64,000 nt of DNA, taken from the IMG/VR virus record IMGVR_UViG_3300049001_000044, positions 124,001 through 188,000 of that record, one strand, 5' to 3'. Position 1 is the stretch's first letter, and the number at the start of each line of letters is the position of its first letter. The translations under genes and the position numbers were made by a program. The notes beneath the pieces were generated by a model that had not been told where the DNA came from, searched no databases, and saw only the letters and a program-made list of their open reading frames with translations. Shown here one piece after another: positions 23,488 to 28,642 of the stretch.

Positions 23488-23925
23488 TCAAAAGACGGTT
23501 TTGATTACGCCATTGCCAGTGTCAATCGAGATCTCTAACTGAATGGACATCTTGTTGTATTCGAACATGCGATAGTCATACCCAGCTTCCCACTCAACTG
23601 CCTGCTTGGTTGGAGGGCCTGCATGCCCATCAGGGTAGGTCCATGGCGAAGTGGGTTGGTAAGGGCAGTGGGTGAAGTCGTTATGGGTGTCGTCATGTTC
23701 TGCAGCCTTAAACCCTTCCAACCATTCCTTACTCTTGGGAGGTGGAGGAAGTGGCATCCAATGCGTGACCTCATCCCGCTCGAACCATCCACCGTTCGAG
23801 TCAAACGTTCTGTTCTTGGCGTCCCATTTAGCAGGCCAGACAGTAGGATGGTTTTGTGGATCAAACACCACTACCAACATCCCATCCTTTGTGGGGTACC
23901 CGTCCTTAACGTCGATCCAGTTCAT
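23488..23925 (-). CDS. DUF551-like N-terminus plus CPY...EAGY C-terminal module
   Basis: MNWIDVKDGYP...VTHWMPLPPPP, then EWLEGFKAA...CPY...EWEAGY. Confidence 0.7.
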   Translation of the reverse strand: MNWIDVKDGYPTKDGMLVVVFDPQNHPTVWPAKWDAKNRTFDSNGGWFERDEVTHWMPLPPPPKSKEWLEGFKAAEHDDTHNDFTHCPYQPTSPWTYPDGHAGPPTKQAVEWEAGYDYRMFEYNKMSIQLEISIDTGNGVIKTVF

Positions 23926-24422
23926 TTGACTTTTGCTTTCAGTGCTTTCAGCGCGGCCTTAGGCAGGTACTTCTTCGCCACCTTTTCCCAACCATTGATC
24001 TTGACCATACCACGGATCATCGAGCTGGACACGGCGACGAGGTCTGGAGGTGGCATGACGAAGACAGTCGAAACCTCTGGCTCAATGGCAAAGTTTACCA
24101 TCTGCTGCCCATGCTCATACTCAAAGTCCACAACATTTCGCAGACCGCGAACAATAACGTCCGCGCCGAATTGCTTTGCGACGTTGGCAGTGAATGTGTT
24201 CTCTGGCAAGAAAGCAATGGTAATACCAGTCAGCCCAAGCTGTTCATTGATGCTATCCACCACTAAGTCGTAGCGCTCGTCATGATCGAAGAAGTACTTC
24301 TTGTCAGGGTTGTCAGCCACCAAGACGATAACCTCATGCGCCATCTTCTGAGCTTCCTTGATAACGTGAATGTGGCCTAGTGTGATGGGATCAAACGACC
24401 CACTAACTACTGCGATGCTCAT
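23922..24422 (-). CDS. coaD: Phosphopantetheine adenylyltransferase
   Basis: SGSFDPITLGHIHVI, VRGLRNVVDFEYE, VSSSMIR. Confidence 0.9.
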   Translation of the reverse strand: MSIAVVSGSFDPITLGHIHVIKEAQKMAHEVIVLVADNPDKKYFFDHDERYDLVVDSINEQLGLTGITIAFLPENTFTANVAKQFGADVIVRGLRNVVDFEYEHGQQMVNFAIEPEVSTVFVMPPPDLVAVSSSMIRGMVKINGWEKVAKKYLPKAALKALKAKVK

Positions 24423-24991
24423 TCGTGTTCTCCCACAAGGTATTCGTAGATCGCGTCACTAATTTCTTCGGCACATTCTTCTGGAGTGGATGAGGTGGTG
24501 TCGACGGTAATGTCGGCCATCTCCATCTTCTTCTCTTCGCTCATCTGGTTTGCGATAACAGACATGGCTTCTACCCTGCTCTTCTTACCCCGTGCGACCA
24601 CGCGATCAACGCGGGTGTCGAATGACGCAGTGATGTGGACGACCAAGTCAAACTCACCTTGCATGTTGGTTTCAAAGAGTAACGGGAACTCGACGAAGTT
24701 CATTCCCTCCATCGACAGCGCCTTACCCAACTTCATGCCAATCTTAAGTGAGGACTGGAGATTAACCATGTTGCGAATCTCGCGATCACTGAAGACCAAC
24801 TTACTGACGATTTCTCGATCAGTGGTTTGAAACTTTTCGTACAGCCAGTCCAACCATCCCTGCTCCGTGTACAGTTCATCTACGAACTTGTCCATTGAGT
24901 AGAAGTTGGCTCCTTCATAGAGTTGTTCCAGTTGCTTGACGATGGTGGATTTGCCTGCGCCAATCCCACCAGTGATCGCGATGTTCATCAT
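24419..24991 (-). CDS. coaE: Dephospho-CoA kinase
   Basis: IAITGGIGAGKST, DR...KLVFSD, EFPLLFE, QMSEEKK...ADI. Confidence 0.88.
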   Translation of the reverse strand: MMNIAITGGIGAGKSTIVKQLEQLYEGANFYSMDKFVDELYTEQGWLDWLYEKFQTTDREIVSKLVFSDREIRNMVNLQSSLKIGMKLGKALSMEGMNFVEFPLLFETNMQGEFDLVVHITASFDTRVDRVVARGKKSRVEAMSVIANQMSEEKKMEMADITVDTTSSTPEECAEEISDAIYEYLVGEHE

Positions 24992-25329
24992 TCTCCGAAT
25001 TCCTTTTTCAGTCGTTCGTATTCTGCCTTGTCCCTTGCTACCCGCTCAGCCTTACGCTTCGCTTCCTTTGTAAGACGGGTCGCGAACTCTTGGTCCGTCT
25101 CTTCCCTCTTGACGTAGATTCGAGCGTAGGCGTAGTAGTGATCAGAATACGCCTCGCACTCTCTGTCGATGTCAAGGGTGGCGTCCTCACCATGCTCCTC
25201 GATGAGGGTTTGGATTTCCTTTAGAGCATCTTTCAGCTTGCCGTTGAGTGCGTACTTGACGTCATCGCGCGCAATGACGTCAATCATTTTCTTAGTCACG
25301 TCTCTTTCTCCAGTCAAAAGGGCGGACAC
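24988..25329 (-). CDS. Hypothetical protein (113 aa)
   Basis: ORF track; 4-nt overlap with coaE. Confidence 0.65.
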   Translation of the reverse strand: MSALLTGERDVTKKMIDVIARDDVKYALNGKLKDALKEIQTLIEEHGEDATLDIDRECEAYSDHYYAYARIYVKREETDQEFATRLTKEAKRKAERVARDKAEYERLKKEFGE

Positions 25330-25534
25330 CTGGCATCGCGTTCATTCTCGTCGCCAGCATGTGAGCATATTGTAACGCTTGTTCGTGGCAAGCAAAATCT
25401 CCGTTCACGACTAACGCTACGTCGTGAGCAAAGTCATGTGATTGAAGGACGACCAGTGGACCTTCTAGTCTGCGCCAGACGTCCACCTGCCACGGTCCTT
25501 GATCGTCTTCTACGTCCTCATGGTGATCACACAT
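25292..25534 (-). CDS. Hypothetical protein (80 aa)
   Basis: ORF track; TAATG overlap with the kinase gene. Confidence 0.55.
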   Translation of the reverse strand: MCDHHEDVEDDQGPWQVDVWRRLEGPLVVLQSHDFAHDVALVVNGDFACHEQALQYAHMLATRMNAMPGVRPFDWRKRRD

Positions 25535-26217
25535 TACTTCTTCTCCTTGTTCTGCTGGTCGTTGACGTACTTATTCCACTTCATCAGGGCAAGCGTCATG
25601 ATGCCAGGCAGATACTCGGCGTCAGGGACGGTGTTGATAACGCGAACTTCATCACACTCACTACCCAACAGGGCGGCTTCTTGGCGGAAGTACTGAGTGG
25701 TCAGCGCGCTGAATGGGATACTCTTGTCAGCGCGAGTAGCTTGGCGATCGTTGAGGATGCGCAGAGGAGTTTGGAACTCTGCTGCTACGATGTGGAAGCC
25801 GAACTGACCAGCAGTTCGGGCGTTCCTCAGATCGTTTACCCAACGAGTGCGCGATTTGCGGGTGACGTTCGTATTGTCCACGATCACCACGTCGTTGTTA
25901 TCACGGACTTGCAGCCACGAGGTAGTAACGAAATTGGAGAAGTCAGCACCCGCCTCATTGCAGAAGTCGAACGCCTTGCGGTAAAAGTCCACCGCTTCTT
26001 CGCGGCCAGTCGGGAAGTCGAACTTCATGTAGCGGAGATCGGGACCTCCGCACATCACACCATGTTCAGTGGCATGGAAGGCGTAGTAGGCAAGACGGCA
26101 GGTGTCCAACGAAAACACACCAACGTCTTGACCCGCATGATCAACCTTCAGCTGTTCGATGAAGGAGGATTTGCCGGAGCCCGAAGGGCCGATCAACAGG
26201 TAGGCTACTTTATTCAT
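25534..26217 (-). CDS. P-loop kinase (AAA_33 / polynucleotide kinase-like)
   Basis: LIGPSGSGKSS, VIVDNTNVTRKSR, RQATRADKSIP. Confidence 0.82.
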   Translation of the reverse strand: MNKVAYLLIGPSGSGKSSFIEQLKVDHAGQDVGVFSLDTCRLAYYAFHATEHGVMCGGPDLRYMKFDFPTGREEAVDFYRKAFDFCNEAGADFSNFVTTSWLQVRDNNDVVIVDNTNVTRKSRTRWVNDLRNARTAGQFGFHIVAAEFQTPLRILNDRQATRADKSIPFSALTTQYFRQEAALLGSECDEVRVINTVPDAEYLPGIMTLALMKWNKYVNDQQNKEKK

Positions 26218-26473
26218 TGTCTTTCCTATCTACGTTACCACGCACGCCTTGGTTCCAAAGTTCGCGCGTATTCACACCCACACCGCTTACGCTCTCATCG
26301 CAGTCTTCGCAGCCAACCATTGAGAACATTGCTTCGCCGAAACCCCTAGCGTTGCCGCCGCATTTGGTGCACTTGTTGTAGCCGATGATGGCGCACGAAT
26401 CACAAAGCCAGAACTTGTCATAGCCTTGGACAGTGCCGCCATGTTCTTCGCAGAACTTACCAGACTTTCTCAT
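26210..26473 (-). CDS. Cys-rich zinc-finger protein (87 aa)
   Basis: CEEH, CDSC, CTKC, CEDC; start moved to 26473 (ATGA overlap). Confidence 0.65.
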   Translation of the reverse strand: MRKSGKFCEEHGGTVQGYDKFWLCDSCAIIGYNKCTKCGGNARGFGEAMFSMVGCEDCDESVSGVGVNTRELWNQGVRGNVDRKDNE

Positions 26474-27096
26474 TGCCATTCGACCAGCTCCCATTCCTTC
26501 ATCCACTCGTCGACACGAGCCAACTTCTCTGCTTGATCATCACTGACTCGACCGTGTTGATCGCTCAACAGCAAGTCCAACCAGGCACGATGGCCAACTT
26601 CACCCAGGCGTTGCATGAGGGCGGTCTTCAGAGCACGACGCTTGTCCTTGTTCTTCAGATCGAAGGGGACGTGATACTCGATCATCATCGCGATATTCGA
26701 GACATCTTGCAACGTGAAGCCCAGCAGCTCCTTCACCAACTCCATGTTCTGAGTTGCGTAGTCCACCCAGACACGAGCCGAAATCTGCTCATGACCATGG
26801 TAGGCACGATAGTTACCGCGTGCTTCGGAATACTTCTGGATTTCAGAAGGCGGTTTGCCCACGTCATGGAAGGTGTTTGCGACCAAGGTCAGCAGGCGTT
26901 GGCGATCCGAACGGTGGATGGCCAGATTTTCCATGTACCAGCGATTCAGCATTTTGGTGTGGACAGCGACGTTCGCTTCACGATGCCATGGCGAGTTCTC
27001 AACCGTGGCCTTCATGTTGGCCCACAGATCCGTCTCCTTGAACTTCGAGAAGAAGGATTCGAACCTTCGAACTGCCTCAGTGTAGGGTTGTGTCAT
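26470..27096 (-). CDS. HD-domain phosphohydrolase (CCA-enzyme / HD-Pnk-type HD)
   Basis: PWHRE..V..HT, FHDVGKP, YHGHEQISA, IEYH, SDQHGR. Confidence 0.85.
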   Translation of the reverse strand: MTQPYTEAVRRFESFFSKFKETDLWANMKATVENSPWHREANVAVHTKMLNRWYMENLAIHRSDRQRLLTLVANTFHDVGKPPSEIQKYSEARGNYRAYHGHEQISARVWVDYATQNMELVKELLGFTLQDVSNIAMMIEYHVPFDLKNKDKRRALKTALMQRLGEVGHRAWLDLLLSDQHGRVSDDQAEKLARVDEWMKEWELVEWQ

Positions 27097-27604: not shown

Positions 27605-28049
27605 TGACCTGGTCTTCACCGCAAATTTTGCCAGTGATTCGCTTCACAAGGACTTCCTGCTGCGAATAGGCTTCCAACTCCCATGGGCGATCCACGTAGA
27701 GAAGGCCCTCCGTTTTGAAGACCTCACCTTTCCAGATGAAGATGTCCTTGCCATCATCCCGCTCTACCTTCAGCGTTCCCTCGAGGAGTTGCTTGACGTG
27801 GACCATCTCATGAGCAAGGGTGGACATCGTTCGCTCAAAGCCCAGCTTTGAATCCAGACCAACACCACACGTCCCATTCAGCAGCCCTGAAACACCAGCG
27901 TATCCTCGATCCTTGCGAAGGTCTTTCTTGACGTAGATGATCACCTTATTGTCGAAGTGGTCGATCTCCAACTCTATGGCCAACATGTGGGCGAAGCCAT
28001 GGAGGAACTTGCGCTTGGCCGCGCTGCTGCCTTCCATTGTGATGATCAT
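27594..28049 (-). CDS. HExxH zinc metallopeptidase-like protein
   Basis: TLAHEMVHVKQ...PWELEAY. Confidence 0.78.
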   Translation of the reverse strand: MIITMEGSSAAKRKFLHGFAHMLAIELEIDHFDNKVIIYVKKDLRKDRGYAGVSGLLNGTCGVGLDSKLGFERTMSTLAHEMVHVKQLLEGTLKVERDDGKDIFIWKGEVFKTEGLLYVDRPWELEAYSQQEVLVKRITGKICGEDQVKVS

Positions 28050-28642
28050 GCTTCACCATACTGGGCAAGTTCCCACTTGATGTTTTCCTTCGCCAGCACT
28101 TCCATCTTTTCGAATTCCTTTGTGATGAAAATCCTGGACTGCAGTGCAGCTTGAAGGAAGGTGCAACGACCGTCGACGTAGGCATCATTGTTGAACTGGA
28201 TAAACTCACGGCGAATTTCGTTCTTGTAGTTCTCGTATCGTGCGGGCTTCGCAGCCAAGATCGCCATGTCCAAGTCCAGAACCAGCTCGGATTCTTGGAT
28301 GGTGGCTTTGTGGGTCTTGGTGTCTAAGATGATCTGTTCGATGGCGTTGATGTTGGTATTTGGGAACAGATCGTTGAAGTCATCTTCGTTCTGGGCGACG
28401 TGGGTCTTCATCAACATCACCGACAACTCTTCGTTCAGTGTAGTCCCTGGAATGTACACGATGTCGTGGTACATGAGGGCTAGAACTTGTTCGTCTGACA
28501 GCGGTAGGTTCATGTTCTGCGCCATGCAGAAGATGTCCTGGATATGACGCTCGTTGTGGTAGGCCCGGTGACACTCGCGATAGTGGTGGCCAACATGGGT
28601 AGCGTACCACTTGAAGTGTCGAGCTTTCTGGAACATGATCAT
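28046..28642 (-). CDS. HD-superfamily metal-dependent hydrolase
   Basis: RAYHNERHI, YHDIVY, NEELS, LDLDMAILA. Confidence 0.82.
   Translation of the reverse strand: MIMFQKARHFKWYATHVGHHYRECHRAYHNERHIQDIFCMAQNMNLPLSDEQVLALMYHDIVYIPGTTLNEELSVMLMKTHVAQNEDDFNDLFPNTNINAIEQIILDTKTHKATIQESELVLDLDMAILAAKPARYENYKNEIRREFIQFNNDAYVDGRCTFLQAALQSRIFITKEFEKMEVLAKENIKWELAQYGEA

What the first reader, a model, noticed from the sequence alone, without database searches (positions are those of the whole stretch)
23922..24991. Coupled coaD-coaE: the last two steps of CoA synthesis in a phage
Seen: adjacent, 4-nt-overlapping PPAT and dephospho-CoA kinase genes with intact motifs. Known: together they convert 4'-phosphopantetheine to CoA, and these genes are usually unlinked in bacteria. 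Inference: by analogy to phage NAD+ reconstitution pathways, this may rebuild CoA after host depletion or hydrolysis, or supply acetyl-CoA users such as the GNAT at 39.7-41 kb.
Basis: partly seen in the sequence, partly recalled or inferred. Interest (0 to 1): 0.62.

Follow-up and report, generated by a model that had tools for sequence, protein, structure and literature searches.

The report
Jumbo-phage module finishing coenzyme A synthesis
A 343-kb soil jumbo phage carries its own translationally coupled dephospho-CoA kinase and phosphopantetheine adenylyltransferase, an old phage-only gene pair (fused into one protein in some relatives, and placed right after NAD-rebuilding genes in others) that most likely lets the phage turn the host's 4'-phosphopantetheine into coenzyme A on its own terms.

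Summary
Minus-strand ORFs 24419-24991 (CoaE, 190 aa) and 23922-24422 (CoaD/PPAT, 166 aa) overlap by ATGA and pass family tests: coaD equivalog 143 bits against a 103 cut-off, Pfam CoaE 87 bits, and an AF2 model whose top 28 PDB matches are all dephospho-CoA kinases.

This is not a recent host capture. Both proteins sit in deep, phage-only clades (99% support), at most ~35-43% identical to any other protein found, and they co-diverge (Mantel r 0.81). The gene order coaE->coaD is kept on unrelated flanks. In at least 43 metagenomic protein clusters the two are fused as CoaE(N)-PPAT(C), the reverse of eukaryotic COASY. None of 80 bacterial coaE loci has coaD within 5 kb.

The complete genome lacks CoaA, CoaX, CoaBC, ACP, PPTase and AcpH, so only the last two steps are viral. 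It encodes a separate NAMPT and NMNAT-Nudix. In three relatives those NAD genes lie directly upstream of the CoA module.

The best reading is a host-independent module converting 4'-phosphopantetheine to CoA. A counter-defence "CoA reconstitution" role is possible but has no known target. The "GNAT at 39.7-41 kb" is not supported. Verdict: a new variant of a known kind, of moderate to high interest.

The parts
24419..24991 (-). coaE: dephospho-CoA kinase (190 aa), first gene of the pair
   Evidence: Pfam CoaE 87.1 bits; TIGR00152 66.3 bits against a 65.55 cut-off. PDB sequence hits are DPCKs. The AF2 model has pLDDT 93.8, and its top 28 Foldseek PDB matches are all DPCK with TM 0.7-0.87. The P-loop, D34, EFPLL and lid R/K residues are invariant in the 23-member clade.
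23922..24422 (-). coaD: phosphopantetheine adenylyltransferase (166 aa), second gene of the pair
   Evidence: TIGR01510 coaD equivalog 143 bits against a 103.3 cut-off; Pfam CTP_transf_like 67.8 bits. There are 34 PDB PPAT hits, best E 5e-25. GSFDPxTxGH, K41, RGxR, DxEYE, N110 and SSS are invariant in the 34-member clade.
24419..24422 (-). ATGA stop/start overlap coupling coaE to coaD, with GGGAGAA 7-8 nt upstream
   Evidence: Read directly from the sequence.
24988..25329 (-). 113-aa ORF of unknown function (phrog_31358), coupled to coaE by a second ATGA overlap (24988-24991). It is conserved only in the closest relatives and is not part of the widely conserved module.
   Evidence: Homologues lie directly upstream of coaE in L003 and L006 only. 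No Pfam hit.
23488..23925 (-). DUF551 protein (145 aa), coupled to coaD by a third ATGA overlap (23922-23925). It is an operon neighbour and is not conserved with the module.
   Evidence: Pfam DUF551 37.6 bits; junction sequence. A DUF551 gene also follows coaD in L006.
25534..26217 (-). Context only: AAA_33 / polynucleotide-kinase-like P-loop kinase (227 aa). A homologue lies within 1-4 kb of the CoA pair in 6 of 13 loci.
   Evidence: Pfam AAA_33 44.7 bits; phrog_6931 C-terminal half; phrog_505 polynucleotide kinase. Recurrence near the pair.
26470..27096 (-). Context only: HD-domain protein (208 aa), matching the N-terminal half of phrog_6931. Together with the kinase it looks like a split HD-Pnk-type RNA end-healing enzyme.
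   Evidence: phrog_6931 residues 6-161, E 1.7e-15; weak Pfam HD hit. Three RNA ligases are encoded elsewhere in the genome.

Best explanation
The pair is a phage-specific 'CoA-finishing' module. PPAT adenylylates the host's 4'-phosphopantetheine with ATP to give dephospho-CoA. The upstream-encoded dephospho-CoA kinase phosphorylates its 3'-OH to give CoA. The two are made in fixed proportion through ATGA translational coupling, and relatives make them as one CoaE-PPAT polypeptide. The phage encodes none of the earlier steps (CoaA, CoaX, CoaBC) and no source of phosphopantetheine of its own. It therefore taps the host pool of 4'-phosphopantetheine and bypasses the host PPAT. From established E. 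coli biochemistry, recalled here, that step is a secondary control point feedback-inhibited by CoA, and 4'-phosphopantetheine accumulates behind it. The result is that CoA and acyl-CoA supply is sustained or raised during a long jumbo-phage infection, independently of host regulation or host shut-off.

Shown here: gene identity, motif integrity, fold, coupling, phage-only monophyly, co-inheritance, fusion, and absence of the other pathway steps.

Inferred: the substrates, the direction of flux, and the physiological benefit.
For: - Family membership of both proteins.
- Catalytic and substrate-binding motifs are invariant over clades that have diverged to 43-50% identity, which indicates purifying selection on enzymatic function.
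- All PPAT-linked CoaE form one clade, and all CoaE-linked PPAT form one clade. Each has SH-aLRT 99 and excludes bacterial and solo viral copies.
- The two proteins co-diverge: Mantel r 0.81, p 1e-4 over 18 pairs.
- The order coaE->coaD is kept on contigs with unrelated neighbours.
- 43 fused CoaE(N)-PPAT(C) protein clusters, all in that order. This is Rosetta-stone evidence that the two act on consecutive steps.
- 0/80 bacterial coaE loci are linked to coaD.
- No CoaBC, CoaX, CoaA, ACP, PPTase or AcpH in the complete genome.
- A separate NMNAT-Nudix and NAMPT exist, so the PPAT is not needed for NAD.
- GC content of both genes equals the genome's.
- coaD and coaE were reported among abundant viral AMGs in snow viromes, where the authors note that CoA-pathway intermediates rise during lytic infection (PMC11097641).
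Against: - No enzymology, no expression data (no RNA run holds the locus) and no cultured host.
- CoaE passes the NCBIfam equivalog cut-off by under 1 bit.
- Nothing in the sequence shows that the phage PPAT escapes CoA feedback.
- No obvious phage-encoded heavy consumer of CoA was found beyond two small GNATs.
- One complete 363-kb genome of the same terminase lineage (G006) lacks the module, so it is dispensable in some hosts.
- Adjacency to counter-defence-type NAD genes in relatives fits the rival reading at least as well.
Confidence: 0.6

Rival explanations
1. Counter-defence 'CoA reconstitution'. A host immune effector, or infection-triggered Nudix/phosphodiesterase activity, cleaves CoA (or strips acyl carrier protein) to 4'-phosphopantetheine plus 3',5'-ADP. 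The phage rebuilds CoA from that fragment and ATP with exactly these two enzymes. This is analogous to NARP1/NARP2 rebuilding NAD+.
For: - The two enzymes are precisely those needed to go from the pyrophosphate-cleavage product back to CoA.
- Like NARP1, the clade is essentially phage-only.
- In L008, L009 and L012 the module follows NMNAT-Nudix and NAMPT, the NARP2 gene set, without any gene between. L013 and L018 have NAD genes 1-3 kb upstream. NARP2 is an experimentally shown counter-defence (bioRxiv 10.1101/2024.02.11.579819).
- In the window the module sits next to a split HD-Pnk-like RNA end-healing pair, another 'repair what the host broke' function.
Against: - No defence system that depletes or cleaves CoA was found in the literature searched, and the NARP papers do not mention CoA.
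- Adjacency to NAD genes holds in only 5 of 13 module loci. In the window's genome the two sets are about 68 kb apart.
- Co-location of cofactor genes is equally expected for plain metabolic boosting.
Confidence: 0.22
2. The enzymes act on other substrates, so the pair is not a CoA pathway. For example, PPAT could act as an NMN/NaMN or other adenylyltransferase, and the kinase could act on another nucleotide.
For: - The HIGH-nucleotidyltransferase and P-loop kinase folds are versatile, and weak secondary hits to NMNAT, FAD synthetase and other kinases exist.
- CoaE is only marginally over its equivalog cut-off.
- In Myxococcus phage Mx1 a PPAT-annotated gene lies beside another cytidylyltransferase and a NAMPT.
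Against: - coaD equivalog 143 bits against 30 bits or less for any NMNAT model.
- All PPAT-specific motifs are invariant.
- The CoaE model matches only DPCKs at TM 0.7-0.87, and other kinases at TM 0.6 or less.
- Repeated fusion and tight linkage of exactly the two consecutive CoA enzymes.
- A dedicated NMNAT-Nudix exists in the same genome.
- The Mx1 PPAT falls outside the linked clade.
Confidence: 0.06
3. The point is dephospho-CoA itself, not CoA. It could serve, for example, as a non-canonical initiating nucleotide giving dpCoA-capped phage RNAs, with the kinase tuning its level.
For: PPAT makes dephospho-CoA. Bacterial RNA polymerases can initiate with it (recalled knowledge, not tested here).
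Against: The kinase that consumes dephospho-CoA is encoded first, is translationally coupled, and is fused N-terminally to PPAT in 43 clusters. That arrangement favours channelling through to CoA. No decapping or cap-related partner was found conserved with the pair.
Confidence: 0.04
4. A passenger or artefact: a recent capture of host genes, or bacterial contamination, with no phage-specific role.
For: Some 'phage' records with coaD or coaE are clearly bacterial sequence. The Microcystis phage MaAM05 coaD lies among rplA, rplK, nusG and secE, and many short 'phage' contigs carry one of the genes.
Against: - The genes lie inside a complete DTR-bounded 343-kb virus between gp32/UvsX and the terminase.
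- The nearest bacterial CoaE is 35% identical or less across 185,579 species' genomes.
- Deep phage-only clades.
- GC content equal to the genome's.
- The module is conserved over five further complete or near-complete 276-389 kb viral genomes.
Confidence: 0.02

Closest known systems
Bacterial CoaD (PPAT, TIGR01510) and CoaE (DPCK, PF01121/TIGR00152)
   Same: The same two folds, the same catalytic motifs and the same predicted reactions, namely the last two steps of CoA biosynthesis.
   Different: Bacterial genes are unlinked (0/80). The phage genes are overlapping or fused. They form separate deep clades, at most ~35% (CoaE) and ~43% (PPAT) identical to anything outside those clades, bacterial genomes included.
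Eukaryotic bifunctional CoA synthase (COASY)
   Same: PPAT and DPCK activities are physically joined. The mouse COASY DPCK domain (2f6r) is among the structural matches. Relatives of the window's genes are fused into one polypeptide.
   Different: COASY is PPAT(N)-DPCK(C) (recalled knowledge). All 43 phage fusions are DPCK(N)-PPAT(C), so the phage fusion is independent. In the window itself the genes are separate but coupled.
Phage NAD+ reconstitution pathway 2 (NARP2: Nampt + Nmnat; Osterman et al., bioRxiv 10.1101/2024.02.11.579819)
   Same: A two-enzyme, phage-encoded route that finishes an adenine-containing cofactor from a late precursor using ATP. It is encoded in the same genome and lies immediately upstream of the CoA module in L008, L009 and L012.
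   Different: A different cofactor and different enzyme families. NARP2 has a demonstrated target (NAD+-depleting defences), while no CoA-depleting defence is known. No experiment exists for the CoA module.
Viral auxiliary metabolic genes coaD/coaE as listed in viromes (PMC11097641) and solo PPAT genes of cultured jumbo phages (Caulobacter Bertelyvirus, Brevundimonas phages, Myxococcus Mx1)
   Same: The same annotation. They show that CoA-pathway genes occur in viruses.
   Different: The virome report only lists the genes. The cultured-phage PPATs have no CoaE next to them, and they fall outside the CoaE-linked PPAT clade, on the bacterial side of the tree.

Membership tests
Phosphopantetheine adenylyltransferase (CoaD, TIGR01510) | Scores above the curated equivalog cut-off, and better than the sister nucleotidyltransferase families | tested here: met
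   143 bits against a 103.3 cut-off. The next best hits are the generic domain TIGR00125 (51 bits) and NaMNAT (29.7 bits). All strong PDB hits are PPATs.
Phosphopantetheine adenylyltransferase (CoaD, TIGR01510) | (T/H)xGH nucleotidyltransferase motif, plus the PPAT-specific K42, RGxR(88-91), D/E-Y-E, N106 and SSS(128-130) residues (E. coli numbering, recalled) | tested here: met
   GSFDPITLGH, K41, R92-G-L-R95, D99-F-E-Y-E103, N110 and S132-S134 are all invariant in 34 clade members. The mapping onto E. coli residues is by motif and not by a displayed alignment.
Phosphopantetheine adenylyltransferase (CoaD, TIGR01510) | Catalyses ATP + 4'-phosphopantetheine -> dephospho-CoA + PPi; homohexamer | not testable with these tools
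   Needs an enzyme assay or a structure.
Dephospho-CoA kinase (CoaE, PF01121 / TIGR00152) | Scores above the curated cut-offs | tested here: met
   Pfam 87.1 bits against 27. TIGR00152 66.3 bits against 65.55, which is marginal.
Dephospho-CoA kinase (CoaE, PF01121 / TIGR00152) | P-loop GxxGxGKS/T, catalytic Asp after strand 2, and lid arginines | tested here: met
   G8-G-I-G-A-G-K-S-T16, D34, and R130/R134/K137 are invariant in 23 clade members. D34 aligns with the second Asp of the LDLD motif of Thermus TT1252.
Dephospho-CoA kinase (CoaE, PF01121 / TIGR00152) | DPCK three-domain fold, distinct from other P-loop nucleotide kinases | tested here: met
   AF2 pLDDT 93.8. The Foldseek top 28 are all DPCK (TM 0.7-0.87). 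The next matches are shikimate, adenylate and cytidylate kinases at TM 0.6 or less.
Bifunctional CoA synthase (COASY-type) | A single polypeptide with the PPAT domain N-terminal to the DPCK domain | tested here: not met
   The window has two separate ORFs. The fused relatives are all DPCK(N)-PPAT(C). The module works like COASY but is not a member.
Phage cofactor-reconstitution counter-defence (NARP-type) | The enzyme clade is encoded mainly on phage genomes | tested here: met
   The linked clades contain only viral or metagenomic sequences. The best bacterial genome hit is 35% identity or less.
Phage cofactor-reconstitution counter-defence (NARP-type) | A defence system is known that depletes the cofactor concerned | tested here: not met
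   The full-text search for CoA depletion in anti-phage defence found nothing relevant. The NARP papers do not mention CoA. A literature search cannot prove absence.
Phage cofactor-reconstitution counter-defence (NARP-type) | The pathway restores the cofactor and rescues the phage from such a defence | not testable with these tools
   Needs infection assays and metabolomics.

The most novel reading that the evidence does not exclude
The CoaE-PPAT module is a 'CoA reconstitution pathway'. It would be a counter-defence of ~350-kb soil jumbo phages that rebuilds CoA from 4'-phosphopantetheine after an as yet undescribed bacterial immune effector cleaves CoA or strips phosphopantetheine from carrier proteins. 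It would be deployed together with NARP2-type NAD+ rebuilding as one cofactor-repair island. If so, it points to a new class of CoA-depleting abortive-infection systems.
Probability: 0.2. Interest if true: 0.85.

Novelty: new variant of a known kind. Interest (0 to 1): 0.6.

Why it matters
CoA is as central as NAD+, yet nothing is known about how phages manage it. This work shows that a lineage of ~350-kb jumbo phages has kept, for a long evolutionary time, its own dedicated version of exactly the last two CoA steps. The steps are always linked and are often fused in an order never seen in cells. In several genomes they are wired directly behind the NAD+-rebuilding genes.

That turns a vague 'AMG' annotation into a defined, testable module. 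It offers three things:
- A natural bifunctional DPCK-PPAT enzyme for biochemistry.
- A probe for whether 4'-phosphopantetheine availability or PPAT feedback limits phage yield.
- A concrete handle for asking whether bacteria ever use CoA depletion as immunity.

If the answer to that last question is no, this is still a clean example of phages taking over a host control point in cofactor supply.

Tried and rejected
- **Near-identical DNA in cultured phages:** none found. A single-protein scan of IMG/VR also found nothing until the clade alignment was used.
- **Cultured phages with both genes adjacent:** none. CoaE tblastn hits in the phage collection are few. They are mostly short unannotated contigs or large scaffolds filed as phage that look like host sequence (Listeria, Enterococcus, Acinetobacter). 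One megaphage, LR756500, has both genes 25 kb apart.
- **Hidden CoaE next to solo PPATs:** the genes flanking the solo PPATs of Brevundimonas and Caulobacter jumbo phages are not divergent CoaE by Pfam.
- **Other CoA-related functions in the complete genome:** ACP, PPTase, CoaBC, CoaX, CoaA and AcpH are all absent, with positive controls working. The Nudix CoA-pyrophosphatase signature (pattern recalled from memory) is absent.
no Pfam support.
- **A third gene travelling with the pair in all contexts:** none. Only the AAA_33 kinase (6/13 loci) and the NAD genes (5/13) recur.
- **Expression:** the only run holding the locus is the probable source soil metagenome, and no RNA run holds it.
- **Complex prediction for PPAT with CoaE:** No statement about binding is made beyond the inference from the fusions.
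- **Xanthomonas phage X1 'coaE' (PMC13384950):** an automated call in an unrelated 200-kb phage, not pursued.
- **The large profile search (search of protein representatives):** not used. The word search, the genome scan and the family scans left neither protein open.
Full report
**1. Observation.**
The window is bases 124001-188000 of a single 343,229-bp contig. It is an IMG/VR virus record with direct terminal repeats, rated 100% complete. On the minus strand, ORF 24419..24991 (190 aa) is followed by ORF 23922..24422 (166 aa), and the two share the four bases ATGA. GGGAGAA lies 7-8 nt before the second start.

The same ATGA device joins an upstream 113-aa ORF (24988..25329) to the first gene, and a DUF551 gene (23488..23925) to the second. 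Four genes are therefore chained. No minus-strand terminator-like site lies within the chain.

**2. Identity of the two proteins.**
The 166-aa protein scores 143 bits on the NCBIfam equivalog coaD (cut-off 103.3). The best NMN/NaMN adenylyltransferase model scores 29.7 bits. Its PDB sequence matches are 34 PPATs, best E 5e-25.

The 190-aa protein scores 87 bits on Pfam CoaE, and 66.3 bits on TIGR00152 against a cut-off of 65.55, so it passes only just. Its PDB sequence matches are dephospho-CoA kinases.

Because the second assignment was marginal, I folded the protein with the clade alignment. The model has pLDDT 93.8. Its first 28 Foldseek matches in the PDB are all dephospho-CoA kinases, with TM 0.7-0.87. 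Shikimate, adenylate and cytidylate kinases follow at TM 0.6 or less.

The motifs that define both enzymes are present. They are invariant in 34 (PPAT) and 23 (CoaE) relatives that have diverged to 46% and 43% identity.

**3. It is a phage, and the genes are at home in it.**
The window encodes a T4-type large terminase, a tail sheath, both RNR subunits, UvsW, a RecA/UvsX-like protein and gp32. The pair lies about 1.5 kb from gp32. GC content is 0.49 and 0.50 for the two genes and 0.505 for the genome. The only sequencing run that holds the locus is a soil metagenome.

**4. Relatives.**
- No cultured phage has similar DNA.
- The word-based protein search found, for each protein, a tight group of metagenomic relatives: 43-78% identity for CoaE and 46-83% for PPAT. 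A sharp drop to ordinary, mostly bacterial, enzymes follows, at 38% or less for CoaE and 43% or less for PPAT.
- Ten pairs share a contig length. Fetching contigs confirmed coaE followed by coaD in L001-L009.
- L003 and L006 are syntenic with the window: HD, AAA_33 kinase, coaE, coaD, gp32, UvsX, UvsW. L001 and L004 have quite different neighbours, yet the pair and its order persist.
- In L006 a 164-aa ORF sits between the two genes. In L018 a 217-aa ORF does.
- A scan of one genome for each of 185,579 prokaryotic species found no CoaE more than 35% identical. None of the 80 best bacterial loci has a PPAT within 5 kb.

**5. Fusions.**
Five IMG/VR contigs (L010-L014, 55-389 kb) encode a single protein with CoaE at the N-terminus and PPAT at the C-terminus. 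Pfam confirms both domains. A search with one fusion found 43 two-domain protein clusters. All are in the order CoaE->PPAT, with linkers of mostly 2-52 residues. All come from metagenomes, and none carries the name of a cultured organism. Eukaryotic COASY has the opposite order (recalled knowledge), so the phage fusion is independent.

**6. Phylogeny.**
In a CoaE tree of 82 rows, all 31 PPAT-linked copies (adjacent, fused, or 1 kb apart) form one clade with SH-aLRT 99. The 40 bacterial copies and the 11 unlinked viral copies lie outside it, and 10 of those 11 group with Bacteroidota enzymes.

In a PPAT tree of 88 rows, all 42 CoaE-linked copies form one clade with support 99. Bacterial PPATs lie outside it. 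So do the solo PPATs of Caulobacter phage BL47, Brevundimonas phage Bambus and Myxococcus phage Mx1.

Distances between CoaE copies and between their partner PPATs are correlated (Mantel r 0.81, p 1e-4 for 18 pairs; r 0.63, p 7e-4 within the close clade). The module therefore arose once and has been inherited as a unit. Both trees were quick-search trees with some long branches. The clade-level result is well supported, but the internal order (fusion first or adjacency first) is not resolved.

**7. Who carries it.**
The window's terminase has 40-57% identical homologues in four other complete or near-complete carrier genomes of 345-389 kb. It has a 29% homologue in a 276-kb carrier. Of further large terminase relatives, a complete 363-kb genome (G006) has only a weak PPAT-like match, and a complete 210-kb genome has none. 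The module is thus characteristic of a family-level lineage of ~350-kb jumbo myoviruses, but it is not universal there.

**8. What else the genome has.**
Searches of the whole genome, with working positive controls, found none of the following:
- acyl carrier protein
- phosphopantetheinyl transferase
- CoaBC
- type III pantothenate kinase
- type I pantothenate kinase
- ACP phosphodiesterase

A regex scan found no Nudix CoA-pyrophosphatase signature. So only the last two steps are viral, and the substrate must come from the host.

The genome does have four Nudix genes, two small GNATs just beyond the window, a NAMPT (508-aa frame) and a 390-aa NMNAT-Nudix. The last two are the NARP2 gene set, shown by Osterman et al. 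to counter NAD+-depleting defences. The phage already has a dedicated NMN adenylyltransferase, and the PPAT does not resemble one.

**9. An unexpected link to the NAD genes.**
Clustering the ORFs around the module in 13 loci showed that in L008, L009 and L012 the order is NMNAT-Nudix, NAMPT, then CoaE/PPAT, with no gene between. L013 has both NAD genes within 7.4 kb upstream, and L018 has NMNAT-Nudix 1 kb upstream. Pfam and tblastn confirm these identities. In the window's genome the two sets are about 68 kb apart.

The only other recurrent neighbour is an AAA_33 kinase (6 of 13 loci). In the window it lies beside an HD protein, and the two match the two halves of phrog_6931. This resembles the HD-Pnk RNA end-healing enzymes mentioned in PMC6097658. 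The genome also has three RNA ligases.

**10. Interpretation.**
The enzymology (4'-phosphopantetheine -> dephospho-CoA -> CoA) is inferred from homology. It is strongly backed by motif conservation, by the fold, and by the Rosetta-stone fusions. I put it at about 0.85-0.9.

Why a phage wants it is less certain. The most economical reading is that the module draws the host's 4'-phosphopantetheine pool into CoA without depending on the host PPAT. From E. coli work (recalled), that enzyme is feedback-inhibited by CoA, and phosphopantetheine accumulates behind it. This would keep CoA and acyl-CoA available through a long infection. I give the whole statement 0.6.

The counter-defence reading gains from phage-only ancestry and from the adjacency to NARP2 genes and to an RNA-repair pair. 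It lacks any known CoA-depleting defence. I give it about 0.2.

The remaining readings are unlikely for the reasons listed under the rival explanations. They are other substrates, dephospho-CoA as the end product, and contamination.

**11. Novelty.**
Viral coaD and coaE have been listed among abundant AMGs in snow viromes (PMC11097641), and JGI's pipeline labels some fusions. I found no description of any of the following:
- a phage-specific, monophyletic, co-inherited CoaE->PPAT module
- its reversed-order fusion
- its adjacency to NAD+ salvage genes

The enzymes are of a known kind, and the arrangement and lineage are new. I rate it a new variant of a known kind, interest 0.6.

**12. Limits.**
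- All relatives are uncultured and the host is unknown.
- No expression or activity data exist.
- The trees are quick searches.
- The carrier genomes used for the lineage statement were found through the module itself, so prevalence is biased upward.
- The complex prediction could not be run.
- The literature search covers only open-access full text.

Noticed in passing
window 25534-26217 and 26470-27096 (minus strand); RNA ligases at G000 70.1, 306.0 and 309.0 kb: An HD-domain protein and a PNK-like AAA_33 kinase match the N- and C-terminal halves of one PHROG family (phrog_6931). They look like a split HD-Pnk-type RNA end-healing enzyme. The genome also encodes three RNA ligases, so the phage probably carries an RNA (tRNA) repair system.
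   Followed up: partly
G000 76379-77110 and 79344-80306 (outside the window); L008, L009, L012, L013, L018: The genome has a NAMPT and a bifunctional NMNAT-Nudix, the NARP2-type NAD+ salvage set. In several related jumbo-phage genomes these genes lie directly upstream of the CoaE/PPAT module, forming a cofactor island.
   Followed up: yes
Its neighbours are a Zeta-toxin/AAA_33-like kinase and an Amidoligase_2 protein, which hints at a peptide-ligation or modification cluster and not at acetylation.
   Followed up: partly
L125 (G003:C1:34897-36297); L011: The 276-kb carrier genome G003 has 9 in-frame TAG codons inside its terminase match, which suggests a TAG-recoded jumbo phage. Its fused CoaE-PPAT gene is open under the standard code.
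   Followed up: no
L116 (MW495066.1 32430-40843): The coaD annotated in 'Microcystis phage MaAM05' lies among rplA, rplK, nusG, secE and a tRNA. That part of the record looks like bacterial sequence and not phage sequence.
   Followed up: no
L119 (Myxococcus phage Mx1, OR576727.2 125265-133651): A PPAT-annotated gene overlaps a second cytidylyltransferase gene and lies 1.7 kb from a NAMPT. This solo PPAT falls outside the CoaE-linked clade, so it may serve NAD metabolism or another adenylylation.
   Followed up: partly
L006 4372-4866; L018 8614-9264; window 28046-28642: The module tolerates insertions. A 164-aa ORF splits coaE and coaD in L006. In L018 the intervening 217-aa ORF is a homologue of a window gene that lies 3.6 kb upstream of coaE. 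Neither has a Pfam family.
   Followed up: no
L206 (G006:C1:86662-87060): A complete 363-kb genome with a 42%-identical terminase lacks CoaE and has only a weak PPAT-like ORF. The module has therefore been lost, or was never gained, in part of the lineage.
   Followed up: no
G000 242816-243013 (L114 1441-2157): A third, weak cytidylyltransferase-like ORF (238 aa, 24 bits) of unknown specificity lies elsewhere in the genome.
   Followed up: no
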